DNA of 63,485 nucleotides, filler included, from Perkinsus chesapeaki ATCC PRA-425 (GCA_013115145.1; 6 parts of 6 records of this genome joined end to end with filler, not necessarily neighbours in it); one strand, 5' to 3'; shown: positions 7,990 through 53,848, counted from the first letter of the whole stretch. The notes: generated from the sequence alone by a model not told the origin. Numbers and translations: made by a program.

Positions 7990-8760
7990 AGCTTACACCT
8001 TTAACAGAACAAGGTTCATTCTTGGTCTCATATTGTTATATGATAATGATCTTTTCATAGTTCACAAATTGATACTGGTAGTACTTAGAAGAAGCTTAAG
8101 CATCAGCATCAATGGTTGTTGTTGATGGCATGCTGCTGCTGCTTTTGGTATTATTAACACTCATTAAAACAACAACAACACATATAATATTAATAATTAA
8201 TAAATCACACTGCTGTTATTGTGAAATTACCACCGCAATCACATGCACCGCCACTAATACTGCCTCCTCCTCCTCCTCTTTCTTCTTGGTGTATTATTGT
8301 ATTATTATTAATCTAATATAATATAATTATTAATATATTATTAATATTACTGGTATATTATGATTTGTTAATGCTTTTATTATCCATTTATCTCTATTAT
8401 AAGGTAATGCTATCATTCCTCTTTTCGTTTCACGTGTTATCTTATAAGGTTTATATTGTGATGATGTTTCTAATGGTGCTTCTTCTTCCTGTTGCTGTTG
8501 TTGTTGATATATCCATTTTTGTTTCCAATAAGACCATTCACCTTATATTATTGATTATAACTACATTATTATTATATTATTACGTAATGGTCGTCGTCTA
8601 TGATGATGTATTGGTGGATATGTTCCCGAATGACAAGTATTCTGTATTATATTGTCCCCTACTACTCCTTCTTTTTTATGTAATGTTATTAATGAATATT
8701 TATTACCCCCTAATGGTCTTGATATAGTATTATAGTATGTATTACCACCACCATCATCAT
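7990..8760 (-). CDS. Probable exons of a hypothetical low-complexity protein
   Basis: Open protein-like minus-strand segments (ISRPLGGNKYSL..., EWSYWKQKWIYQQQQ...) bounded by intron-like AT tracts; no family recognised. Confidence 0.3.
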
Positions 8761-10528: not shown

Positions 10529-11956
10529 ATGTCATCAATATTAATAAGAGATATAACCACATTATATACCTGTTGTGGTGGTGATGATGGTATAGGATAT
10601 AGAGAGAATGCTGCTATTGGTATTAATAATGGTAATATAACTTATATTGGTGATAATATAATAGATGATAATTATGATATAATAATATCTGGTAAAGGTC
10701 TAATAGCATTACCTGGTTTAGTTGATTGTCATACACATTGTGTATGGGCCGGTAGTAGAAGTAATGAATTTAGTAATAGATTAAAGGGTATGAGTTATAT
10801 TGATATATTAGAACGAGGTGGTGGTATATTAAGTACAGTTGCTGCTACTAGAAAGGCAACTATAGAGGAACTAACAATGACATGTAAAAGAAGATTAAAT
10901 AATATGTTAAAGATAAGTGGTGTAACTGCATGTGAGGTTAAATCTGGTTATGGTTTAAATACTATTACAGAAAGTAATATGTTAATAGCAGCTCGGCAAG
11001 CAGCAGCAGGAGCAGGAAATGATGTACCTAGAGTAACTACTACATATTTAGGGGCCCATACGGTAATATAGGGTAGTAATTAAGGTGGTGATGGAGGCTG
11101 TTGTTGTTATTGATAGATACCTGTTGAATATAAAGATAATAGATATGGTTATATAAGGGATATTATTGAGAATCAATTACCTATATGCGCACCATTGTCA
11201 GATAGTATTGATATATTCTGCGACAAAGGAGCATTTACATTACAAGAAGCTGATACTGTAATGTTATAATAATGGATATTAGTCGATCGTATTATTAGAT
11301 ATTATCATTTGGTAAAGATACGTATAATTTGGAAGTTAAAGCACACGCTGAGCAAATAGAGCACAGTGGTTGCGCTGAATTAGTTAGCAGATTGAATGGC
11401 ATATCAGCAGATCATTTAGAAAGATTGGATATAAATGGTATTAATGCTATGAAAGAGGCTAATGTAGTGGCTGTTATGTTGCCTGGTGCACAATTATATT
11501 TAAAAGATATATCACCACCAACAGCATTATTAAGGGATAATGGGGTACATATGGTAATAATAATATTGATAATAGTAAATATTAATAATATTAGGCAATT
11601 GGTAGTGATTTAAATCCTGGTAGTAGTCCTATACATAATTTATTCACTTGTGCAACATTAAGTTGTATATTACAAGGTTTAACAGTAACAGAAGCATTGT
11701 TAGGGATAACTAAACATGCAGGGGAAGCTATAGGTATGCCAAAAGCTGGATGGTTAGGTATTAATAGTTATGCTGATATAGTAATATTAATAGGGATAAT
11801 TATAGTAGTAAATATGTTGATAAATAATAGGTATTAATACAACCACCAATTGGAGAGGAATGTAATATTGAAAGTGTTATACAACATATTAATGGACATA
11901 TTATAAGATTAGTTATTAAAGATGGTATTATCGTTTATAATGAGACATGTTATTAG
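10529..11956 (+). CDS. hutI: Imidazolonepropionase (amidohydrolase), 4 short introns
   Basis: PGLVDCHTH, RGGGILSTVAATR, EVKSGYGL, TYLGAH, DIFCDKGAF, HAEQ, ADHLE, DLNPGSSP. Confidence 0.93.
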
Positions 11957-12037
11957 TTTCTATACTATCATTATCATCATCCATATTGTCCATATTGAGT
12001 TAATAATAAGTAATATATAGTGGTACTAGTTATTATT

Positions 12038-14355
12038 ATGGTTAAACGAAAAGGATCTAATAATAAAGCTATAACTATTGATGATATATCTGATAGTAAA
12101 TTAAGTAATAAACATAATATAACATTAACACCAAGGTAATAATAGCATTGTAATTAATTTAAATAATAATATGTGAATAGAAATAATGTAGGTCATCATA
12201 TGCCTGTTCATCAGAGGGTATTGATATACTGGATCTAATGTAGGTAGTTGTTGTGATAATAAAAATAATATTAAATAGATATAATGTTGTTATTATTACT
12301 ATTATTATCAGATATAAACCAATCGAAGCCTTTACTGATGGACAATTATCACCAAGATTAGTTAAATTAAGGTAATAACGGTTATTAGATAATAGGGAGG
12401 ATGGTGATGATGATGTTATAGGTATGACTTTTATGAAGCTAAAAGGAAGGATCTGTTGACAGCAGTAAAGAGGGCAAGGGATAAAATAATAGAAAGTAGT
12501 GATAGTAATGATAATAATAATAAGTTGTTATTATAATAATAAAGGGCAAACGACAAGAAGAACTAATGCTGATGGTGGTGGGGGTGTTATAATGATACCT
12601 GGAATAGATGATGATAAAATGTTAGGGAGATTAGATGAGTAGTGATAATAGGTATATAATAGTAGTAGTTGTAGTAGTAGGTATTGTACTGTACAATTAG
12701 AACGATACAAACTTAATAGGATACAAGAGCATGAAAGGAGGTGGTTAGAGTCAACATTAGGACATGAATTGCATATGTTAAAGAGGATGGAGAAGGGTGT
12801 GGCTTATATGGAAGCAGTAGATGATAATAGTGCAGAGAAGATGGCAAAGGATGCAGCTAAAATAAAGGAATTAAATGATAAAAGGAGAGAGAGGGAAGAA
12901 GAAAAACAAGCTGAGGCTGAAGCACAATATAGATTAGAAAAAGAAATGGCTAAGAAGGAGTTCTTAAAACAACAAGAAGAATTAATGGAGCAACAAAGGA
13001 AGGAGGAAGAAAGGAAACAAGTAATATGGGATAGAGGGAGGGGTAGAGGGGGGTGGGGTTATTAGGAGATGCATGAGAAATCATTAGCAGAGGCAGAAAG
13101 AAGAAAAAAACAGGAATATGATAAAATGATGCAACAGGAGTATGCATGGAGGTAAGGGTGATTGTGGTAGGGGTAGTAGGGGTAGTAGAGGTTGTTGTTG
13201 TGGGGTAGTAGGGGTAGTTGTGGGGTAGTAGGGGTAGTTGTTGTTGTGGGGTGGTAGGGGTTGTTGTTGTTGTGGGGTAGTAGGGGTAGTTGTTGTTGTT
13301 GTTGTAGGTTACAACAGGACAAACTGGATGAGATGAATAGAAAGGATGAAGAGAGGTTAAAGTTACAAGAAGAGCAAAAAGAACAAAGACAAGAATATAT
13401 GAGAATGGTAATTAAAAAGAAAAATGATAGGGTTATGGCCTCTATTAAAAATAATGAAGATTTAGAAAATAAAAGAAAAGAAGAGTAATAATGATAAGGG
13501 GAGTAGTAGTATGGTTCAAGGTGGTGATGGTGGTGGTATTAGATATTTACAAAGGTTAGAGGAAGAACAAGCAAGAGAGGATAGACTAGAGGAGAGGAGG
13601 AGACATCATTATGAGGAGGGAGTAAAAATAATAATAAGAGGAACCATTACTAGTATGGTGGTTATTGTTGTTAGAGTAAACGATCATTAGCATTGACATT
13701 GAAAAGAAAGCATATAATAAATGAGGCAGTAAGGAGACAAGAAGAGAGGAGGAAGGCTATATTAGATCATCAACAAGAGACAGAACAAAGGTTATTAGAA
13801 CATGAGTTAAAAAGGGAGAGGTAATAATAATAATAATGTTGTTGTTGTTGTTGCTGTTTTTATAGTTGTTGTTGTTATAGTTGTTGTTATAGTTGTTGTT
13901 ATAGTTGTTGTTATAGTTGTTGTTGTTGTTGTTATGGTTGTTGTTGTAGGTATTTAGAGTTTAAGAGGGAACTAGATGCGTTAAAGGAGAAGAACAAAGA
14001 GATGAATGTGATGAGGCAAAGAAGGAGGGAAGAGCATAAGAGAAATACATTTGCATTACAATCTAAAATTAAAAATGATAAAAGTAATAATTTAATAGAA
14101 GAAAGGAATAGATTATGGGAGGAGAGGAGGCAAACTGGTATAGAAGCACATAGGGCAAGGGAATTAATAAAGACAACAATAATGGATATGAAGGTAATTA
14201 GGAAGGGTCGTAATAGGGCGAAGCTGATGATGATGTAGGTTAAATCAAGATTAAGTTCAAGTAAATTGGAGAAGATTATCAAAGATATATTAACAAAAGA
14301 AAGATTTCGACCAACAACAACAGGGGCAGGAGGAGGAGATGTAATAGGAATATAA
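12038..14355 (+). CDS. Hypothetical coiled-coil (E/K/R/Q-rich) protein, multi-exon
   Basis: Series of charged helical exons separated by 40-100 nt GT-AG introns. Confidence 0.6.
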
Positions 14356-42137: not shown

Positions 42138-43015
42138 CATAGCTAGGACCGCTGTAACAGCGGTTGAACGGTTTGAATTTCACGCCCCATCCTTCATTAG
42201 GGTGGTGGTAGGTCAGTTAAAGTTCTAGTTGCACAGAATTGCCAGTAACGGTAGACCAGTCGAACCAGCCGCCTTCAGTAACNNNNNNNNNNNNNNNNNN
42301 NNNNNNNNNNNNNNNNNNNNNNNNNNTTAATTAATTAANNNNNNNNNNNNNNNNNNNNNNNNNNNNNNNNNNNNNNNNNNNNGCTAGCCTAGCTCTGTCC
42401 CTTAGTTGTGTGCTGAAAAGTGCGCGCGCCACAAATCTCAACACCTCTCCATGCGTAGTCTCTTTGGAAACAACACTAGTGGTCGGGGACCACTCTTAGT
42501 TATTCAATTTCCGATATACATCTGAACCAGTTGTGTTCGAAAAAAGATGATGTTGGCGGACTCGAGGAGCAGGTCGATAAAACGGTGATAATGGCCGCAT
42601 TTCAAAGTACTATGCAGCGGGATGGGGAAGTGTACCATCACCCTGACTAAGACCTTATTAAGGGGTGTCATTAGTATATTGAGTAAGGCATTTATATATG
42701 ATTCTGATCCACGCCGTCCTCTCATAACTTTGATTGTGTGCGACTCGAAAGGTGAGATTTGGCGGCCTGAATTTACCACTCGTAATTTCGTACTAGACCC
42801 CGAAATAGGTTGATTATACTATATTAGTGTGACCCAATCAACAATTAGTTATTACTATCCCATATTACAGACTGATATTAATATATAACGGTAAGATATG
42901 TACTACTTGACTACTTTTAACGCACGGGGAGCACATCAATCTGGGAAGTATAAATACACATATATTGTTTGTACTTATTCGCGGTGACCGAAATGAGTGC
43001 TGAACTAATACAAGA

Positions 43016-43214
43016 AAATCAGTGGTCTTATAGGAAATCAGTGGTCTTATAGGGGATCAGTGGTCTTATAGGAAATCAGTGGTCTTATAGGGAATCAGTA
43101 GTTTTATAGGAAATCAGTGGTCTCATTGGAAATCAGTGGTCTTATAGGGAATCAGTAGTTTTATAAGAAATCAGTGGTCTTATTGGAAATCAGTGGTCTT
43201 ATAGGGTATCAGTG
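43016..43214 (+). repeat. 19-20 bp minisatellite (AATCAGTGGTCTTATAGG[G]A), about 10 units
   Basis: Head-to-tail degenerate units, no spacers. Confidence 0.9.
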
Positions 43215-46200
43215 AAAAGTGGATCCGGTGGTTATTCATTAGAACAAATATCATTAAGATATATACTACTGTTTGAAAGCCAAGCTACAAAATTTCATAT
43301 TTAACAAATAACTTAAGAAGTCGAGGGCATCGAAAAAATGATTGGCTTCGATGCAGCGGAATCGTCTGGGGAATATATCTTCTATCATGCGCCATGTCAA
43401 TGTCTCATGGTTCCGTGGTGCATTTCACTTGATATGAATAACAATATTTCGATCATCGATATATGTTCGCACACTGTTTGGTATGAAGTGTGTAGTGCGC
43501 TGGAGTGATACTTGTGCGGTGGGCGAGTTATTCGAGGCAGTGCGGATAGTTGGTGGTTGGATGGTTGGAAGTTTCTTGCTTGAACTGGCCATTTTATGTA
43601 AATGGCCAGTTTAACAGTTTTTGTTTACAAGCCTGGGGGTTTAATACTTATACTGTTATTGCATGGTCCACCGAATGGCAACGCGACTCCCACATTTGAG
43701 CTCGTAATAGTGTAACATCGGCACTACTAGAGCGAAGCATACAAATAGTGCACCTCTGATGGTTCTTTGAAAATCTCGACTTTGGCAGCAATGTCATGAA
43801 CTTCATGACATGAAGGGGAGCTGCCCAGCGTTGTGCAGTGAAACTGTGAAGCGGAATGGGAACATTATACGTATATGGGGACACAAATTGTGTCGACGGT
43901 CCCACGGAACTATGCACGACGGCTAATGGACAACGGGAAACGATGAGGAAATGCAAAATATCATTCCTGAATCTCTTTGAATGAACTTCGGTTCGGCGCG
44001 TCCTTTCTACGACTTGGTGGTCATGCATTCTCTTTTAAGGTGGCGGATTTAGGGAAAAGTGAAAGCAGTGGTACCAGTTGTTGTCCTACTTTATGATTCT
44101 TGCAATCCAGCTCTGATGCTGTTGGTTTGCGGGGGCGAACCATGCTTTCGCATCCTCAGAGCATGCACCACGCTATTCCCCTCAAAGTCCCTTATGCACG
44201 CATTATAGCATGTACTATGCTACTTTTCCATCTCTGGCTGCCTATTTCCACTGTGGCCTGGAAGCGAGTGCCTGCATGAGGAAAGGAAGCTCCATGACTT
44301 GTGGTAAGCTAGAGAGTCCTACAGGAGAACTCCAGCAGGACCAGCAGTTGGTCATTTGCGTAACGGACTGCCGCTTACCGCAGCACATACGCCTTTGAGA
44401 ATACACTCATTAGTTACGCTACTTGTAGCCAAGAGGGTTGGCCAAGAGGACCATATCATGGTCTCCTCCACAATCTCCTCCGCGGTGCCAGGGATCCTGT
44501 CACAGAACTACTGTGACCGCAGTGCTGTCACCGTAACGCTCTTCGACTCGCAAAGCACAATCGAGCCACCGCTTTAGTATGGTTAAACTTCTTGCAAAAC
44601 TCGATCACACGGTGTGAGTTACGCTCAATCCTTCCGTACATTGGTCTTGGCCAGTAGCAGCATTATCTCCAAAAAGAGACAATCCCCAAAGGAGTGGCTC
44701 GTTATTCGGCAATATCGTTGTGTCACAACCGTTTCGGTCTGCGAACGGAGAACGAGTTAGAATTGATCGTTCGGACCACGAAGCGCACCATTACAGGAGG
44801 CACTCGGAGTGCCACACTCCCCTATAACGTGTATGAATGCACATGTGGACAAATGCATGGCAAATCACTATCGGCACCCCATCGTTGTATTTGTAATGAA
44901 TTAGGATCTAGCTTTACGTTGAAGTTCTCTTCCTGTTTCCCGCGAAATAAAATGAGCATTGTTGGATCGTCTCCCTACCAGCGTCTCATATGAGAGAGTC
45001 TCTCAGAGAGACTCTAGAGGAGCTCCGCCAGGCCATCACCGAAGCGATCAATAAACTTAGCGCTGTGAAGCTTCGCAACGGTAAGCAAACCTTCACCGGA
45101 TCCATTCGCGTGCTCTTTAACACGCATTCCTCTCGTCGAAGTTCTCGGTAAAACTGGAGTCTAAACTCTTAGCACTTAATGCCGGCGGCCGTGTCCTCGT
45201 CGGGATTCTTTCCTGCTTGGATATATGTGTAGATAAACGCCGCCATTCTACGGCATCGACGACTGCCAGCAGCGTGACCGGGCTCGAAGTGAAGGAGGAA
45301 TTCTCACAGCCTCGCGAAATCCCTGAGGGTCACCATCCCATCACGAGTCGGAAAGCATCCACGGGCCAGAAGCGCGGGAATCGAATGATGATGATCGAGG
45401 ACCTGAGAGTAGGCATGACTGGGTGAGTCTTGGCTTCAAGCTACAGTACTTCATATTTTCGTGCTGTCTCACATGATTCTGCCCAGTTGGTACATCGAGG
45501 CCAGGATACGCCTGTGGATACGAAGACGGAGGTGCGACCTATCACCGCTGGTGAACTCTTCTACGTAAACGTGCACGACTAATGTGGAATCCACGTTAAA
45601 TTGCTGTTCTTCGATGAGGTGGGACATCAAATTATGTGATTCACATATCTCTTGGTTTCAATAACCATGCAGTTTTGTTGATCTTTGCGACATGGAAATA
45701 TTAACAATATCTTTTTTGCGATCTTTGTCATATACCATATAATATGTCAGGGGCGGATCCAGGCCTGTCAGTCGAGGGGGGCGTAGGGGTACCAGGGTAT
45801 CCCACTCAGGGGGCGCGAAGATCAAACAAAACAATCGAATTGTTTTTTATGAAATGATTATTATTGGACCAATAATATTGGTGAGAAAGTCTATTGCGGC
45901 CTTAGGAACCTGTAAGAGGTCTGCAAATCGGTAGGTAAGTGCTCTCCGCCTCTTTCCAGAACATCACGTAGCAAAGCGAATCGCTTTAAGCGATCTCTAG
46001 TTTCAGGGCCTGAGTTGGCGTTCCTTCGTCGGGTTTTTTTCTCAGTAGCTCGTAGCGGACGCTCTTGCATAACGGTACGAACATATCCTTACGAAAGTCA
46101 TCACGACCAACACCAGCTTCCTCATAATCAACACGTGCTCTTCGACGGGGACGCTGAGCTAGCGGGGGAAGTTCCAGTGCAGGAGTTCCAGTTCCTTAGA

Positions 46201-46545
46201 GTTCCAGTAGTTTAATTCGGCGATAGTCACAATTTGTGACTCACAAAAAATTTCAAGAAAATTTGACGTCGAATTCCGATCATTCCCTCTCAACTTTCTG
46301 CGCGCATCAGAACAGAGCGGGCTGCAGTACATTCATATATCCCAAATCGGGATATTGGGATTCCCAATACGGCATTTAATTTTGACTTCCAGGCGGCACA
46401 CAAATACTACAGCGAAATGGAAGAGTCGGCCTCATACCTGTTCACTGGTGGACGGATTTGCAAGGCACACAATGTGTACAAATAAGAGGGCACGGATTGA
46501 AGTGAGTTAATTTCCAGAAGCCGTGTTACTCTGGTAAACCTTAGA

Positions 46546-48194
46546 TTGAGTTCGACTGCAATGCTGATATCAGAAGAGTGCCCCATACCATTGATTCAAC
46601 ACAAGCCTAATCTTGAAAATGAGGTAGCAAAGTGGTCCTTGTTGTTAGATTATTCAGCCTCTCCCAGAGTCTCGGCTTCAGGTGAGTTGAAGCCTGTCGA
46701 AGCTATATACCTCACAAGTCAGCTGTCCTCCTTTTTGCTTCTTATTCGGGTAGGTACCGAACTATATCGCAAGGAGTAATGATGCATGCGAGGCGGTAAA
46801 TCGAGCCCTGAAATACGGTAACAATTGCTACAATTGAATTGTAAGCGTTGTGAACCCTTGTTGCAGGACTAATAAAAAAAGGAACCTCGATAGCCTGCCT
46901 CACGAGCTCATGAAGGTGTGCACCGGCTATAGTCGAAGGATCGAAGCTAATCTCAAAGCCTTCAACGATGATGGCAAGCTTGAGCGAAAATATGTGATTG
47001 AGGGTGGAAAATGACTAGACCAAAAACGGCCAAAAATATCTGGATGAATGGAGCCCAGACGAGATATTACTTACCTTCACACCAGATCATCATGGGATGG
47101 AGGAAGAACGAGTTGGAGGCAGTCATCAAGGGTTTCCACGTGCGATACGAGAGCAACTCTAGCGACTCTGGGCGATCTTGGGATGAGTATCAGTATCTAA
47201 TGCGGAATATACTTGTCATTGAGCGATGCCGACCTCACTATGAATGCAGCTGCCCAGAAGGACGCACTGGGGTAATACCCCAGGGGTATGTGAACATGTT
47301 ATCGGGGCGTATCTGCTGGAAAACAAAGTCAAAGGGTATAATTGGAAAGAATTTACCTTGCCAGGAGTATCTCCAGAAAGAAGACCCAGGTAATAACCCT
47401 TAAATCCTGAAACTTCGGCGACCAATTCTCAGATACAACTCGACGCCTGCACGAGGAATAGACTCGTCCCACCAGGAACGGAGCATGGGCCTAGTAGCAT
47501 TCATACAACTACCGAACTCTCTCTCGTTACCGGGCATGGCCTAGATCGTGAAGGAATCTAATCACCCGGAAAATCCAGTCCATACAATCAATGATAACTA
47601 CAGTTATGGTATGCAGACTGGCAACTCTCTTGAGACTCTCAAGTTGAGAGATACTTCACACCCTAAGCGGATGGGAAGAAGCGTCGCCACCGAAGAAAAG
47701 TACAACAAAAGCAATGCCAAAGCAGTGAGAGAACGAACCCTGATGTTGAGGAGGCCGTTGAGATGATGGACCATATTGCCGGAGAGATCGTTAAGATGAT
47801 GGACCATAATGGAGGAGAGGTCGCTGAGATGATGGACCATAATGGAGGAGAGATCATTGAGATGATGGACCATAATGAAGGAGAGGTCGTTGAGATGATG
47901 GACCATAATGGAGGAGAGGTCGGTGAGATGATGGACCATAATGAAGGAGAGATCATTGACATGATGGACCATAATGAAGGAGAGGTCGTTGAGATGATGT
48001 ACCATGATGAAGCAGAGGTCGTTGAGATGATAGAGCATATTGCCGAAGAGGTCGTTGAGATGATGGACTATAATGAAGGAGAGGTCGTTGAGATGATGGA
48101 CCATAGTGAAGGAGAGGTCGTTGAGATGATGGGCTATAATGAAGGAGGGATGTTAACGATTGGTACAGGTAAAACACGTACACCTAATGTTTAA
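46546..48194 (+). pseudogene. Decayed SWIM zinc-finger (MULE-transposase-like) gene with a C-terminal 11-aa repeat
   Basis: YECSCPEGRTG[V]CEHVIGAYLL emerges after removing the 14-nt insert at 47268; several stops and frameshifts; MULE assignment rests on the SWIM motif only. Confidence 0.65.
47745..48145 (+). repeat. 33-bp coding tandem repeat (GAGATGATGGACCATAATGAAGGAGAGGTCGTT; MMDHNEGEVVE), about 12 units
   Basis: Direct reading; ORF 47763-48194. Confidence 0.9.
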
Positions 48195-48985
48195 TCTCCA
48201 TAAATCACGTTCATACTCAACTCGATTGCTGGAAACACGTACACAGTCGGCTCGTTCGCTCCTACTCAGATCATCGGCAGTTTGACTACCAAAAGTACGT
48301 GCATTATTATATCGTATCCATAAGCTCGGTACACTTGCATTCAGTACACTAAAAGTTCGTACACTTTCACTCCGTACACTCGAAAAATTTGAAAAGGCAG
48401 TTGCTCCGGCTCCGCCGGCGCTTTAACTCCCAGCTTACTCACCCCAAGCTTTCAGCTCCTCACACTCCCGTGAACTTAAAATACTCCGGGTCAGGCTCGA
48501 ACGGAGAGCCATGCGCTTGCCAGATGTCCCTTATACCACTAGAGCAATCCGACTACACGATTCAATGTCGCATTGACTCGGTATTGATCCCCCAAAAAGT
48601 GCTTATCGCTTCGCCGGACAGATAAAGTTTGCCAGTTATGTCGCCTCTGGGAATTGAACGCTCAGCCTCTGGATTAAAAACTAGTGATCTCCCTACTGAA
48701 CTGGAAGAATATCGCGTAAGTGTACGAGCCATCGGGTATACGAGTTCGAGGAGTACGAAATCAAACTGAACCAAATCTTCGTGTACGACACTTATATGAA
48801 CGAGATTTTTGTGTACTACTTGGCTCTGAACCTATTTTTGGTGTATCACATTTTGTCGACAGAGACTTGAGTGTACGGGAATTTGGTGTACCAGCTAAAG
48901 GTCAAAAATTCCGTGTACGAGTTTCATGTGTACCGTACACAAGTGTACACAGTGTACGTAATTTGTGTGTACCAGTCGTTATACA
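48170..48985. mobile_element. Candidate non-autonomous DNA element with opposed (C)GTACAC / GTGTAC(G) subterminal motif arrays
   Basis: About 6 GTACAC copies at 48170-48385 and about 10 GTGTAC-type copies at 48720-48980; no clear TIR or TSD found. Confidence 0.45.
48641..48709 (-). pseudogene. Degenerate tRNA-Lys(UUU)-like sequence or SINE head
   Basis: Minus strand AGTTCAGTAGGGAGA (A-box-like), TTTTTAATCCAG (anticodon arm-like), GTTCAATTCCCAG (T-loop-like); stems pair poorly. Confidence 0.35.
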
Positions 48986-49533
48986 CCCGTTCCTATGAGG
49001 ACATCCCTATGAGTCCTGCGAGGTTCGAATTCAGATAAATCAGTAGAATGAGCCGTATCTAGCTTGACTCTCAAGTCTCTATTTTCCTCAAGAATTTCAA
49101 GGTATTGTTTCTTAATCAATTCAGCAAGAGTCCTGGCGGACTCTTGCAATCTGGCGCCGAATGAATCAGAAAGAATCCGATCGCTATTGAGACATTCATT
49201 CACAACGTCCTCGATCTCGCGTACTAAATCTTTAAAGGGCACATAGCCATTTGCTGAACTATGATAGTTCAACTATCCGACCCATCGCTAGCGGCCCTGT
49301 CGTTTGCGATACTACCATTTTGCTCGTTAGCTTCTCCGGATTCAAGGTGATCCTCATCATCCGAGTCTTCCTCATCGGCCCAGCCTAGCTTGTTCTTCTT
49401 CAATCCAGTAACATTCGGCGACGGGGGGCACGGGAGCGTTTGCCGCGCTGGGTTGGAGTCTTCCCAGACGGCGGAATTGGCATGGTTTAAAGTTGTTAGT
49501 TGAAGAAAAATCCAACTTGGGCCAGATGGCTAC
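48979..49533 (-). pseudogene. Processed (retroposed) pseudogene beginning with a relict spliced leader
   Basis: GTAGCCATCTGGCCCAAG at 49533-49516, short pyrimidine-rich UTR, ATG, intronless frames joined once the 49256 footprint is removed. Confidence 0.65.
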
Positions 49534-50186
49534 TTGCGTTGGTCAGGAATAGGGATAGATTGTACCGCCTGCAGCGTGCGCGACATAACATGGATATCAT
49601 CAATAGTACGATCATCCCCAGAAGCAAATGAAATAACACTACGGTTACTAGAAGGCACTATACCATGATTAGCAACCGTCCTCTCAGAGGACTTCTCTGC
49701 GAAGTAACTTAAGGCCGAAAAGCCAATAACTCTTCGACCTCCAAAGAACCCTTATCAATAAGTGTACCACAATACTTTTGGAGCTGCCAAAATGTAGTTG
49801 AATAGACTCGGCCTGAGTCACTCAGGTACCTTTAGCGCAGGGCGTATCGTAAGGGCTATAAAAATATTTTTTACGTTTTTCTCGTGATATAAAATTGCAA
49901 ATGGGCCAGATGATAGCCATAAAAATATTCTTATGAATCATGGTGACACCATGATGGTGTGTGCTGCACACAGTGTGTATGGTTTTTATCATTGAGGTGT
50001 GGATCGTATTTTACAATTCGGGCTGTATAATTAAATCTTATTTCAGGACAGTTTAGGTAGTACTGTAGAGAAGCTTGTAATATCGACTCGAATATTGTGA
50101 TTTATAGCCCCTGGTTTACCAAGTAAACGCCATATAGCTCTTATTGAGACTGAAATAAAAGAGTCTTATTGCTTACTCTCCAGGAC

Positions 50187-51715
50187 TTAACTCCCTTCGT
50201 CCTCATCCTCGTCGTCCACCAGCTCCGTGAAACGCGCCACAGCCTTAGTGTACGCCTTGCGCCTTAGCCGACCTGGGCCATCGCCACCAACATCATCTTG
50301 TTGAATATCAACCTCCAGTTCAGGAGATTCATCAACGGACGGACATGTTTTAACCGATCCTTGTGCAAACCTCTTTATCCCCTTAGGCCTCTTCCTTCGA
50401 GCTTTCGCATTCATCCAATGCTTAACCATATCGGCAATTAGCTCATCGTTCCTAATATTCCTGCTATAAGACTGAAGTGTACGCGTGCACATATTCTTCC
50501 ACAAGTGCTTGTCAGGCGCCGTGCTAAAACTCAACATTTTTTAAGTATGTATGAAAATCCAACTTGAACCCATGCAATTTCTTCGCCCGTATAAAAATGC
50601 GCTTATGAAATGCCCTGCTTTAGCGCTTCATATAACCTCGTCAATGACAAAATGTTCGGTGGTAACTAGGTCGAAAATGACTTCTCCACCTTCCCTGTAT
50701 GCCAACTGGACGGTCGACAGTTCGCCGAGCACTTATGCTCAACTTGCTAACATCATACTGGGCATCCACTAACTTACTTAGTGAACAGTTGCTGATTCCG
50801 GGAATCAGATTCCCGCTGCAGGACTCCCACATGAGCTATAATGCGCAGTCTTCATATGCACTCACGTACTGCTGAGGTATACAGCAGCTGTATTGCAGCT
50901 TGCTATGCCTAGATTGCGTATGGGTCCTGGCAAAGTATACTCATCCTCAGTATAATCTGGTCCAGATAGATCATCGCAATGTCCGGTAGATTTGATGAGA
51001 GCTCGTCTGACTTTGATAACTTGAACAGGAAAAGCATTCATCAGTCGTCCGAAGGTGATATCTGTGACGTTACAGCGTCCATAATATGGACTACATATAA
51101 GCTTTCGCCTTTGATGTCGTATCTTTCAATAAGACCCCTGATGTAAGTCTTAGCTTCCGCCTTGAGGCCCTTCTTCGATGGTTCAGCAAGCTCTTAAGGA
51201 ACTGCTGGTTGAATGCTTCTGTGTTACTGAACTCGGTGCGAGAAGGTGAGATTCTCACCGTGAGAATCGATTGCGCTATACAGTTCGGCCCTAACTGATC
51301 GTTGGACGACTGTCTATAAAAGACAAAAAAAACACCTGCCACAGCTTGAAGCTGTCAGCTTCTCGACTATCCGACGCAATTGGTTGTCTGATTGATGCGA
51401 TTGGCAAACACTAACCCAAGTCTGCCCCAAGCACTGTTTCGCCGTTCGCTGCTTGGCAAGCAGCTAACGGCAAAACACAGTCGGTGATGGAAGCTTTGGT
51501 ATTGGCCGTGCCAATTCGTTCCGCGAGCGGGGCGTGAGCATATTGACTGGACAAAATCGATTGGAATTATTCGAATAACCAACACATTCAGACAGAAGAT
51601 CCCACTGGCAGATTAGCAGTCGTCCCCCAGTAGAAATATTCCGTCTCACTGAGACAGTCTCGGTACACACAGAAGCCCCGTTGCAGAGTACTACTCTGAG
51701 AGTATTCGGTTCCAT
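50187..51715 (-). pseudogene. Fragmented long ORF of unclassified, probably transposon-derived origin
   Basis: Collinear protein-like minus-strand fragments (50187-50537, 50641-50832, 51091-51342, 51367-51715) broken by stops and at least five footprints. Confidence 0.45.
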
Positions 51716-52900
51716 TTCCGAACTATCAATGCCAGTTCATCTAATTGAATCCGTCACGTAATGACTCATTAATGAGCCGCATCAAGTGCGGCTCACGGCC
51801 TGATGGAACATCATTTTCACGATCACGATCACACTACTGGAGTTGCTCGTGAATCACGAGTCGTGATCACTGATCTTGGATCTTATCGCAGACGCCTCTT
51901 GGAATCCGACTCGGAATGTCGGATCGTGGATTTTATGATGGCGGCTGCCCCGTGGGGCAGCCACAATTCTAAACCTTTTCAATATCTAGTTCGTCCTCCG
52001 GTGAACTCGGGCTCAGATTAACTCGAAGTTTTGAAGTTCGAGTAAAGTTCTTCTTTCCTTATAAAGTTCAACTTCATAACCACGCAGACTAGGAGGAAAT
52101 TGATTGTCCGAAAACGAAATTAAGTGGGCGAAAGGGACAGTTCTAAAACGAAATTGAATCTTCGTATTCGGACCATCAACTTCGCTCACCGCAACGAAAT
52201 CGATGTTCTCAAGGGCAAACTAGATATTGAAAAGGTGTTGTATGTTCCCATATATATTACTCTAGATATTTACACAGTGTAGAGCACATGATGTTGTGAT
52301 ATCAACAGCGCCCTAAACCTCACTGGCAGTGAGTCACTGCCCTATATTAACAGTGTTAATTAAACACAACTCTGTTCATATTAACTGAGCTCCCGTATAA
52401 TTCGATACAAAAAGCAGGAGTATTATGTTAGGTAAGCGAATGTCGTGATCCAAGTCACATTACCACATACAGAATTGTATCACTGGATCTACGATAGACC
52501 ATGTGTGAAGAAGGTGTCATGGATACCTGTGCTTCGAATGCATCAATTCAGAGGGAGCCTTTGAGAGGCTAGAGTAACTCTACTAGAGCTCAGAATGCCC
52601 TCGACATGCTAGCAGATGACAGCGGGACTTCACAATGGCTACAGTAGCCAGGCTACTGAACTTTCGGGTTTGAGGTCATGCCTCGGACTGAAGCTCTACG
52701 ATATGGCCCGTGGTGGTCTACGTCATGCTCGTAAAATCCCATCGAACACGGGAGTGCGGGAGGAATACTCAAACCCGAAACCCGAACACACTCCAAAAGT
52801 NNNNNNNNNNNNNNNNNNNNNNNNNNNNNNNNNNNNNNNNNNNNTTAATTAATTAANNNNNNNNNNNNNNNNNNNNNNNNNNNNNNNNNNNNNNNNNNNN

Positions 52901-53848
52901 TCGGGAACTTACAATTGCCCGAAAGGGATCTGTAACCTTTACCTTTGCCTTTGTACCCTTACCCTTACCCTTACCTCCACCACTCGCCATCGGACCAGAA
53001 TACCAGTTGGAGGCAGCCGAGCTCATTGCCGATATACAACATAGATCAGAGGTTGCGAACTCCTCTGCCCTCGATAGGACAGACACCACCGCCTCAGTAT
53101 ATGACATATTCTCCTTGGCAGCAAGCTGGTGCGCTAGGACCCTTAGACGACCACGAAAGTTACGGTCAACCCGAAGGCACACCGAATCGCCGGACATCAT
53201 CGACACCTTCGCCAGATAACATATATACTCCGCCATAGCCGCTCCTTTCTGGGCCGAACATGCAACTTCGACCGCTACCAGCCAACCGCATAGCGGGAAC
53301 ACCAGCTCGCTGAAACAGCGGGGCTCCCTGGCCCCAGACCTGATCCGCACTTGGACCATTTCACCATCCAGACGCTCTCTAGTCTCGGTAGAGTCCTCCG
53401 CGTTAGCCTGATCACTTGGGACACGAAGAGTTCTGTACACACCTGGGTCAAGCATAATAGCCGCCAACATAGGCGGGTCAACCAACAGATTATTAGACAG
53501 GCCACCGCCATACCTTGTTGTGGATCTCGACAAGAAGTCAACCCTCAGTTTGGCAGGGGGTAACCTTTTACCACCGGTAGCGTCCACCACAGCTTGCAGC
53601 TCAGTCTTCAGACGCATCAGCGACACCTGACGGCCCAGCTTCTGATCCTCCGAAGCGTCTGCGACCTCCGGCGAGAACTTCTTATAAAGAGCTTCACGAA
53701 GCTCCTGATTAGCCAGCACACCTTCAATATCACCTAGGCGGTCCAGGCCCATGCTCTTCAGAGCCTGTACTGCCTGCTGAGCAAGCTCAGCTGTGCACCC
53801 AGCAGTTGCCAACTCCTTGAAAGCCTCCGATGACAAGGAGTCACTCAT
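52901..53848 (-). mobile_element. Gag-like ORF1 of a DIRS/tyrosine-recombinase-type retrotransposon, truncated by the gap
   Basis: EYICYLAKVSMMSGDSVCLRVDRNFR resembles the DIRS gag Y..LA...W....YD..FR motif; G/K-rich tail; RT and YR not in the contig. Confidence 0.55.

What the first reader, a model, noticed from the sequence alone, without database searches (positions are those of the whole stretch)
43794..52590. Dense field of stereotyped 14-nt 'inverted-target' insertions: a hairpin-excision scar system
Seen: about 25 sites share one architecture, the first 7 nt of an 8-mer, then its full reverse complement, then its last 7 nt (e.g. TGGGGTA-ATACCCCA-GGGGTAT, GAACTAT-GATAGTTC-AACTATC, CATGGTG-ACACCATG-ATGGTGT). 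Each site has a different 8-mer. Fifteen are exact. With 14 constrained bases, chance expectation is about 4^-14 x 63 kb, or 2e-4 exact hits at uniform composition. Twenty-three lie in one 10.4-kb contig (about 1 per 450 bp), and I saw none in the gene-dense contig 1. Established: hAT transposases (Hermes, Ac, Tam3) make 8-bp TSDs and nick 1 nt into the flank, leaving flank hairpins that read N1-7+rc(N1-8) on the left and rc(N1-8)+N2-8 on the right. Inference: opening both hairpins and annealing through the shared 8-nt inverted copy gives exactly this product. hAT footprints are normally heterogeneous, so near-uniformity suggests one dominant, microhomology-based repair route, possibly without classical NHEJ. 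The density means either an extreme insertion/excision hotspot or, more speculatively, a domesticated hAT-like activity that stamps frameshifts into mobile DNA.
Basis: partly seen in the sequence, partly recalled or inferred. Interest (0 to 1): 0.92.

Follow-up and report, generated by a model that had tools for sequence, protein, structure and literature searches.

The report
Transposon excision scars littering Perkinsus DNA
This Perkinsus chesapeaki contig is peppered with 22-base scars, each an 8-base site rewritten as forward, reverse and forward copies; they are best read as footprints left when hAT-type jumping genes cut themselves out, and the same scar fills non-coding DNA of three Perkinsus species.

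Summary
The piece is a whole 10,418-bp Perkinsus chesapeaki contig. It holds 30 sites of the form N1-7 / rc(N1-8) / N2-8: 15 exact, 10 with one substitution, 5 with two. Shuffled sequence gives about 0. Independent read sets reproduce the sites exactly, so they are not assembly artefacts.

Paralogous copies carry the plain single 8-mer at about six sites. The extra 14 nt are therefore insertions, made repeatedly and at different times.

Several features fit hAT-type transposon excision:
- only an 8-mer geometry is enriched;
- palindromes have one unpaired centre base, which is the complement of the terminal duplication base;
- the targets show T at position 2 and A at position 7, as for Hermes;
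- rarer variants carry classical P-nucleotide tracts, one 22 nt long.

The dominant product is what annealing of the two opened flank hairpins through the inverted 8-nt duplication would give.

The scar is not confined to this contig. It occurs at 1-3 per kb in gene-poor DNA of P. chesapeaki, P. olseni and P. marinus, and is rare or absent inside genes.

I did not find the responsible element or its transposase. The "frameshift stamping of mobile DNA" idea has no support. I rate this a new variant of a known kind.

The parts
43794..43815 (.). canonical scar, target TCATGAAG, exact
44508..44529 (.). canonical scar, target CTGCTGTC, 2 substitutions
44799..44820 (.). canonical scar, target GGCACTCC, 1 substitution
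44991..45012 (.). canonical scar, target TGAGAGAC, exact
45626..45647 (.). canonical scar, target ATCACATA, 1 substitution
45861..45882 (.). canonical scar, target TTATTGGT, exact
45973..45994 (.). canonical scar, target AAAGCGAT, exact
46226..46247 (.). canonical scar, target GTCACAAA, exact
46339..46368 (.). 30-nt variant ATCCCAA ATCGGGAT ATTGGGAT TCCCAAT. The inverted 8-mer is present twice. Either the two P tracts joined without annealing, or a second insertion and excision occurred in the inverted copy.
46822..46843 (.). canonical scar, target CAATTGTA, 1 substitution
47268..47289 (.). canonical scar, target TGGGGTAT, exact
47629..47650 (.). canonical scar, target CTTGAGAG, exact
49256..49277 (.). 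canonical scar, target GAACTATC, exact. A diverged paralog in run X1 has the empty site. Removing the 14 nt joins two reading frames into 178 codons.
49678..49699 (.). canonical scar, target GTCCTCTG, 1 substitution
49805..49826 (.). canonical scar, target GACTCAGG, 1 substitution
49830..50625 (+). Candidate resident non-autonomous element. Exact 8-bp duplication CTTTAGCG at 49830-49837 and 50618-50625. 780-bp body at 49838-50617 with imperfect inverted ends CAGGGCGTATCGTAAGGGC / CAGGGCATTTCATAAGCGC. Weak: homology with paralogs stops inside these ends.
49939..49960 (.). canonical scar, target CATGGTGT, exact and young. Two paralogous copies (contig 181 and a contig of run X2) have the empty 8-mer.
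49958..49979 (.). canonical scar, target TGTGTGCA, 1 substitution. Older: shared with the contig-181 paralog, including the substitution. Overlaps the previous scar by 3 nt.
50793..50814 (.). canonical scar, target TGATTCCC, exact
50879..50900 (.). canonical scar, target ATACAGCT, 1 substitution
51077..51098 (.). canonical scar, target GTCCATAT, 1 substitution
51245..51266 (.). canonical scar, target GGTGAGAA, exact
51341..51362 (.). canonical scar, target ACAGCTTC, exact
51427..51463 (.). Non-canonical footprint: CCAAGCA + C + a 22-nt reverse complement of the right flank (20/22 matches) + CAAGCAG. This is a 1-nt left P tract and a 22-nt right P tract around the duplicated CCAAGCAG.
51554..51575 (.). 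canonical scar, target AATTCGAA, 2 substitutions
51642..51663 (.). canonical scar, target CGTCTCAG, 2 substitutions
51684..51705 (.). canonical scar, target CAGAGTAG, 1 substitution
51758..51776 (.). Non-canonical footprint GTAATGA CTCAT TAATGAG: a 5-nt left P tract. Chance expectation 0.07.
51846..51867 (.). canonical scar, target CTCGTGAT, exact
52319..52340 (.). canonical scar, target CTCACTGC, exact
52346..52367 (.). canonical scar, target ATTAACAC, 1 substitution
52549..52570 (.). canonical scar, target CAGAGGCT, 2 substitutions; overlaps the next scar by 2 nt
52569..52590 (.). canonical scar, target CTAGAGTT, 2 substitutions

Best explanation
Each 22-mer is the footprint of one insertion and one later excision of a cut-and-paste transposon of the hAT type.

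Step 1, inferred from the 8-mer geometry and the target bias. The element inserts with an 8-bp target-site duplication (abcdefgh on both sides), at sites weakly matching GTCnnGAC with T2/A7.

Step 2, inferred from the odd palindromes centred on h' and a'. This is established chemistry for Hermes and Ac. On excision the transposase nicks 1 nt into each flank, and the flank 3'-OH attacks the opposite strand. Both donor ends are then closed by hairpins that read abcdefg-h'-g'f'e'd'c'b'a' on the left and, in top-strand reading, h'g'f'e'd'c'b'-a'-bcdefgh on the right.

Step 3, inferred. Host nucleases open the hairpins 8 nt or more from the tip. This turns the inverted copy of the duplication into a 3' tail on each end.

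Step 4, inferred from the sharp peak at an 8-nt insert. The two tails are complementary over exactly the 8 nt of the duplication. They anneal as in microhomology-mediated joining, flaps are trimmed and gaps filled. The result is abcdefg + rc(abcdefgh) + bcdefgh, a net +14 nt.

Other openings and joinings give the rarer variants. Precise repair leaves no trace.

Shown directly:
- the 14 nt are insertions into pre-existing 8-mers;
- they arose independently in different paralogs, and at different times;
- the process has run for a long time and is recent in at least one case;
- it occurs in three Perkinsus species;
- scars accumulate in non-coding DNA and are rare or absent in genes, as expected for neutral frameshifting scars removed from exons by selection.
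For: Statistics and geometry.

Reality in reads and in other assemblies.

Polarity, meaning an empty 8-mer in paralogs:
- window site 49939 against contig 181 and against a contig of run X2;
- window site 49256 against an X1 contig;
- four private insertions among three old paralogs in contig 181, two of them with exact 14-nt gaps in automatic alignments.

Age structure: site 49958 is shared by 96%-identical paralogs, and one scar is shared by 75%-identical paralogs.

Hairpin signature: odd palindromes 28 against 0.7 and even palindromes 0 against 0.6. The centre bases are complements of the terminal duplication bases in 30 of 36 sites. Published Ac/Ds footprints are likewise centred on the complement of the base next to the transposon end (PMC5873905).

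Target bias: T2/A7 is 44% against 27% background in 71 sites (p = 7e-6), with G1/C8 and C3/G6 at 32%. Hermes prefers T at base 2 and A at base 7 (PMC8721813).

Heterogeneous minority consistent with hairpins: 1-nt + 22-nt P tracts, a 5-nt P tract, 3-6-nt classes 9 observed (8 after removing one that is a sub-alignment of a canonical site) against about 0.9 expected, one 15-nt double tract, and 7-nt tandem duplications 8 against 2.1.

One candidate resident element with an exact 8-bp duplication and CAGGG... inverted ends.
Against: - No site was seen still occupied by an element.
- No hAT transposase or other transposon domain was found in the open reading frames scanned from about 24 kb, the window piece and the gene-poor part of contig 181.
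- The one TSD/TIR candidate has a chance expectation of about 0.1, and its paralogs share only the inner 615 bp, not the ends.
- The density of 1-3 scars per kb of gene-poor DNA requires a very large number of insertion and excision cycles.
- Opening both hairpins at least 8 nt from the tip in most events is unlike the mostly short P tracts reported for Ac/Ds in plants and Candida.
- The state of the end-joining machinery in Perkinsus was not examined.
Confidence: 0.8

Rival explanations
1. The scars are excision footprints of a cut-and-paste element of another superfamily that also makes 8-bp duplications, rather than hAT. Candidates are Mutator-like (MULE), Merlin or an undescribed one.
For: MULEs make 8-10-bp duplications and also form flank hairpins (PMC5499845). 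Merlin-related transposases with 8-9-bp duplications exist in P. marinus (PMC8101967). No hAT transposase was found here.
Against: Only K = 8 is enriched, with no 9- or 10-mer versions. The T2/A7 target bias is the Hermes/hAT one. Muta1 excision in yeast is more than 90% precise. Merlin ends start with GG and its cleavage chemistry is unknown. The one candidate element here starts with CAGGG, which is hAT-like.
Confidence: 0.1
2. The insertions arise without any transposon, by a replication or repair error. Examples are a short template switch to the complementary strand and back, or snap-back synthesis during polymerase-theta-type end joining.
For: Template-switch and templated-insertion mutations do create local inverted copies. 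No element was caught in place.
Against: Such processes give variable lengths and need microhomology at the switch points. Here the geometry is fixed at 7+8+7 in 30 of 36 core-exact sites, and both centre bases follow the hairpin rule. The target shows a symmetric transposase-like bias. Variants with long one-sided palindromes still retain both 7-nt arms of an 8-bp duplication. Two copies of the 8-mer are needed to build the product, and that is what a target-site duplication supplies.
Confidence: 0.04
3. A host-controlled, domesticated hAT-like activity makes the scars. It would act either as a defence that frameshifts mobile DNA or as junctions of programmed elimination of inserted sequences.
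For: Alveolate relatives (ciliates) use domesticated transposases for programmed DNA elimination (my own knowledge). The density is very high and the product is uniform.
Against: Scarred DNA shows no transposon protein domains. An LTR-retrotransposon pol gene in L006 carries none. Scars simply fill non-coding DNA and avoid genes. Their ages are spread from very recent to older than 25%-diverged duplications, as for a neutral mutational process.
Confidence: 0.04
4. The structures are sequencing, library or assembly fold-back artefacts.
For: Short inverted repeats can be created by polymerase template switching during library preparation.
Against: Contigs of up to 2,320 nt assembled from other runs, from two studies, are identical at normal single-copy depth. 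The signature is present in assemblies of three species, including the separately produced P. marinus ATCC 50983 assembly. Scars are shared between paralogs with the same later substitution. They avoid genes.
Confidence: 0.01

Closest known systems
Excision footprints of hAT elements (Ac/Ds, Tam3, Hermes; hairpin model of Coen et al. 1986)
   Same: 8-bp duplication retained on both sides. Palindromic P nucleotides are centred on the complement of the base next to the element. Microhomology is used in joining. Long palindrome arms (up to 20 nt) are reported for Ac/Ds in yeast (PMC5873905).
   Different: In the experimental systems footprints are heterogeneous and mostly short. Here one product, with the whole 8-nt duplication inverted between its two 7-nt arms, makes up roughly three quarters or more of the recognisable footprints. 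They are preserved at 1-3 per kb of non-coding DNA in wild genomes of three species.
P nucleotides at V(D)J coding joints and Transib/RAG hairpins
   Same: Hairpin-capped flanking ends are opened off-centre and give palindromic additions.
   Different: By my own knowledge, RAG/Transib hairpins have no 1-nt offset, so they give even palindromes, and Transib makes 5-bp duplications. Here the palindromes are odd and the duplication is 8 bp.
Short template-switch mutations and polymerase-theta templated insertions
   Same: Local inverted copy of adjacent sequence inserted at one point.
   Different: Those are variable in length and position and have no target consensus. Here the geometry is fixed, two overlapping palindromes follow the hairpin rule, and the target bias is transposase-like.
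MULE (Muta1) excision
   Same: Flank hairpins, 8-9-bp duplications (PMC5499845).
   Different: Repair in yeast is mostly precise and duplication length is variable. Here no 9-10-mer versions are seen.

Membership tests
hAT transposon excision footprint | 8-bp target-site duplication flanking the scar | tested here: met
   Only K = 8 with offsets 1/1 is enriched among K = 6-12. Direct 6-mer repeats peak only at spacing 14.
hAT transposon excision footprint | Flank hairpin with a 1-nt offset: palindromes with one unpaired centre base that is the complement of the terminal duplication base | tested here: met
   Odd palindromes 28 against 0.7, even palindromes 0 against 0.6. Both centre bases follow the rule in 30 of 36 core-exact sites. 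Literature description in PMC5873905.
hAT transposon excision footprint | Target preference nTnnnnAn | tested here: met
   T2/A7 is 44% against 27% in 71 sites from three species, p = 7e-6. The Hermes bias is cited in PMC8721813. The bias is weaker than reported for Hermes.
hAT transposon excision footprint | Scar is derived: related copies carry the single empty 8-mer | tested here: met
   About six sites have the empty 8-mer in paralogs.
hAT transposon excision footprint | Resident elements with YARNG inverted ends and 8-bp duplications in the same genome | tested here: inconclusive
   One candidate at 49830-50625 (CAGGG... ends, exact CTTTAGCG duplication; chance expectation about 0.1). Paralog homology stops inside its ends. 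Nothing convincing in the other loci scanned (about 77 kb).
hAT transposon excision footprint | hAT transposase (DDE core plus hAT dimerisation domain) encoded in the genome | not tested
   Only open reading frames from about 24 kb were scanned against Pfam, without a hit.
hAT transposon excision footprint | An allele or strain with the element still in place at a scar position | not tested
   No occupied allele appeared in its output.
Microhomology-mediated joining of opened hairpins | Product length set by the length of the complementary tract, with a minority of other joints | tested here: met
   Insert length 8 between the arms occurs in 29 exact cases against 0 expected. Other lengths (3, 4, 5, 6, 15, 23) are rare.
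Template-switch mutation | Variable length and position, no fixed geometry, no target consensus | tested here: not met
Intron or other RNA-level element | Conserved boundaries or a known RNA family; removal from transcripts | tested here: inconclusive
   Each site has a different sequence with no boundary consensus. There are no Rfam or tRNA matches. No RNA run holding the region was listed, so removal from RNA could not be examined.

The most novel reading that the evidence does not exclude
The scars are not by-products of ordinary selfish transposition. They would instead be junctions made by a host-harnessed hAT-like excision system. That could be a domesticated transposase, or programmed removal of hAT-derived insertions, loosely comparable to transposase-driven DNA elimination in ciliates. 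It would be active across the genus Perkinsus.
Probability: 0.05. Interest if true: 0.9.

Novelty: new variant of a known kind. Interest (0 to 1): 0.62.

Why it matters
If the reading is right, Perkinsus genomes keep an unusually legible record of transposon excision. The sampled density suggests thousands of dated scars per genome; this is an extrapolation from under 90 kb, not a count. Each scar reports one insertion, one excision and one repair event.

- It points to a very active hAT-like element, past and probably present, in parasites of oysters and clams for which genetic tools are scarce. Such an element could become a tagging tool.
- It shows which repair route these alveolates prefer for hairpin-capped breaks: distal hairpin opening, then annealing through 8 nt. 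This makes the question of their end-joining machinery directly testable.
- In the gene-poor DNA sampled, the inserted 14-mers alone make up about 4% of the sequence (30 x 14 nt in 10.4 kb). The process is therefore a noticeable source of indels and small palindromes there.
- The scars are also a practical marker. They frameshift pseudogenes, can mislead gene prediction, and provide presence/absence characters for strain and paralog dating.

Tried and rejected
- Removing the 14 nt does not restore long genes across the contig. It only joins a few frames: 178 codons across 49256, 109 across 50879 + 51077, and 125 across 47268.
- I suspected a SWIM zinc finger re-formed across 47268. Pfam did not support it, so I dropped it.
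- Pfam scans of 112 open reading frames from the window and 50 from contig 181 gave no transposon or other credible domains.
- A protein search with the 48982-49272 frame found nothing. A search with the 151-aa neighbour found only itself.
- The excess of direct repeats at spacing 15 and 30 comes from a 15-nt GTGTAC satellite, not from footprints. The excess at spacing 8 is not significant and does not follow the hairpin rule.
- TSD + TIR scans of all fetched loci gave only chance-level hits besides 49830-50625. The P. marinus hit lies in a CTTAAG-rich repeat.
- The 278-bp inverted-repeat element (51966-52243) and the 119-bp one (52662-52780) show no 8-bp duplication.
- The contig of run X2 that lacks the 14 nt at 49940 has the same homology limits as the contig-181 paralog. 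I therefore treat it as a paralog, not as proof of a strain polymorphism.
- Folding the 22-mers shows only two alternative weak 6-bp hairpins; two of the three 22-mers fold no better than shuffled sequence, so nothing suggests an RNA or DNA structural role.
- Literature searches found no description of this signature in Perkinsus. They gave no statement on Ku or ligase IV in Perkinsus.

Full report
**Observation.** The piece 42383-52800 is a complete 10,418-bp contig of Perkinsus chesapeaki, assembly GCA_013115145.1. The exact look-up of its only catalogued protein gives a longest contig of 10,418 bp, and the nearest relative is a P. chesapeaki protein. A scan for N1-7 + rc(N1-8) + N2-8 finds 15 exact sites and 25 with at most one mismatch. 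Counting the minimum number of substitutions gives 30 sites: 15, 10 and 5 with 0, 1 and 2 changes. Order-2 Markov shuffles give 0, 0.003 and 0.07, and there is no excess at three or more changes. Of all geometries tried (K = 6-12, offsets 0-3) only K = 8 with offsets 1/1 is enriched. Direct 6-mer repeats peak only at spacing 14. Palindromes with a single centre base are 40-fold enriched, while palindromes without a centre base are not enriched.

**Not an artefact.** Contigs assembled from other public runs, from two studies, reproduce the scars. A 2,320-nt contig matches 50438-52757 with no difference across 13 of the listed sites, and a 1,556-nt contig matches 51202-52757. The signature is also present in the separately produced P. 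marinus ATCC 50983 assembly and in P. olseni (names).

**Polarity: the 14 nt are insertions.**
- A 96%-identical paralog of 49852-50467 on contig JAAPAO010000181.1 has the plain CATGGTGT where the window has the 22-mer at 49939. It shares the neighbouring scar at 49958, including its later substitution.
- A contig of run X2 with the same homology limits also lacks exactly these 14 nt.
- A diverged X1 contig reads straight through GAACTATC at 49256.
- Inside contig 181 there are three old paralogs, 75-80% identical. Each carries private scars where the others have the single 8-mer. Two of these show exact 14-nt gaps in automatic alignments, and one scar is shared by two copies.

The process is therefore recurrent, old and still recent.

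**What made them.** The structure is two overlapping palindromes. Their unpaired centres are the complements of the last and first base of the 8-mer, and this holds at both centres in 30 of 36 sites with an exact core. Published Ac/Ds footprints have this property: P nucleotides centred on the complement of the base next to the transposon end, explained by flank hairpins (PMC5873905). hAT, Transib and RAG all use flank hairpins (PMC5499845). An 8-bp duplication is the hAT norm. The one-nucleotide offset rests on my own knowledge of Hermes.

Pooling 71 sites from three species, the target shows T at position 2 and A at position 7 in 44% against 27% background (p = 7e-6). G1/C8 and C3/G6 are weaker preferences. 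Hermes has the same T2/A7 bias (PMC8721813).

A minority of sites are other hairpin products:
- 51427-51463 keeps both 7-nt arms of CCAAGCAG around a 1-nt left tract and a 22-nt reverse complement of the right flank;
- 51758-51776 has a 5-nt tract;
- classes of 3-6 nt occur 9 times (8 after removing one sub-alignment of a canonical site) against about 0.9 expected, and there are two "double tract" forms;
- 7-nt tandem duplications are mildly enriched.

The sharp peak at an 8-nt insert (29 exact cases against 0 expected) is what annealing of the two opened hairpins through the inverted 8-nt duplication predicts. Blunt joining of randomly opened hairpins would give a broad distribution. This step is inference.

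**What is missing.** No occupied site and no transposase were found. The only candidate resident element is 49838-50617, with an exact CTTTAGCG duplication and CAGGG... inverted ends matching at 15 of 19 positions. Its chance expectation is about 0.1, and its paralogs share only the inner 615 bp. Pfam scans of open reading frames from about 24 kb were empty. A few highly active elements with frequent excision and local reinsertion would leave many scars and few resident copies. Overlapping neighbour scars (49939/49958 and 52549/52569) fit local or repeated targeting. This remains inference.

**Distribution.**
- Contig 181 has 44 candidate sites in 15.6 kb. That is about 3 per kb in its gene-poor part and about 0.3 per kb in 12 kb holding a kinase gene, the start of an aminotransferase gene and smaller genes, with none inside the kinase gene.
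- P. chesapeaki contig 97 has 13 sites. Nearly all cluster in an intergenic stretch, and none lie in a retrotransposon pol gene or a 483-residue gene.
- P. olseni has 10 sites in 10.6 kb and none in 8.6 kb of a giant gene.
- P. marinus has 6 sites in 8.6 kb.

The field is thus a genus-wide property of non-coding DNA. It is not a hotspot of this contig, and there is no sign that mobile DNA is the target.

**Comparison and novelty.** The mechanism class, hAT excision footprints with P nucleotides and microhomology, is known. I did not find three things described in the searched literature: the near-uniform 7+8+7 product, its density in natural genomes, and its presence across Perkinsus. I rate it a new variant of a known kind. 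Rival readings are another 8-bp-duplication superfamily, transposon-free template switching, a domesticated or programmed activity, and an artefact. They are weighed in the Rival explanations section, and together they hold about a fifth of the probability.

Noticed in passing
window 47751-48147: Twelve copies of a 33-nt tandem repeat (86% matches), open in several frames (e.g. ...EMMDHNEGEVV... repeats). No scar lies inside it.
   Followed up: partly
window 43016-43214: Tandem array of a 19-nt unit AAATCAGTGGTCTTATAGG, 10.5 copies, with a 57-nt higher-order period.
   Followed up: no
window 48200-49400: Very high read depth (up to about 380 times single copy) over a degenerate 15-nt GTGTAC-containing satellite and adjoining sequence. 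Other runs hold versions lacking 298 nt (48271-48568). No canonical scar lies between 47650 and 49256.
   Followed up: partly
window 51966-52243 and L001 7829-8067: A 278-bp element with 32-nt imperfect inverted ends. A truncated copy (about 88% identical) lies on contig 181. No 8-bp duplication is recognisable at its borders.
   Followed up: partly
window 52662-52780: A 119-bp unit with inverted ends TTTCGGGTTTGAG at the contig end. Read depth is about 250 times single copy, so it is a high-copy MITE-like repeat. No 8-bp duplication was seen.
   Followed up: partly
L001 2930-3403, L001 4916-5365, L002 14860-15315; L004, L005, L006, L007, L008: A Perkinsus-restricted family of small (about 108-180 residue) proteins, at least one with a signal-peptide-like start. 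It has several paralogs per genome in P. chesapeaki, P. olseni and P. marinus, and no Pfam match.
   Followed up: partly
L003 8625-9166 (scar at 8652-8673): A 136-residue Peptidase_C1 gene model, much shorter than the usual papain-like protease, carries an exact scar within its range. It is possibly a pseudogene or a model distorted by the scar.
   Followed up: no
L006 2766-2787: An exact scar lies within the range of a DEAD-box helicase gene model, near its 3' end. Whether it is in an intron, the UTR or coding sequence was not checked.
   Followed up: no
C181 record about 53271-53411 (L001 about 11918-12058) and L001 6041-6076: Clusters where several scars and palindromes are nested or repeated at the same 8-mer (e.g. 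CATATTAC; the palindromic target CTCATGAG gives a 7-nt tandem run). This suggests repeated insertion into earlier scars.
   Followed up: partly
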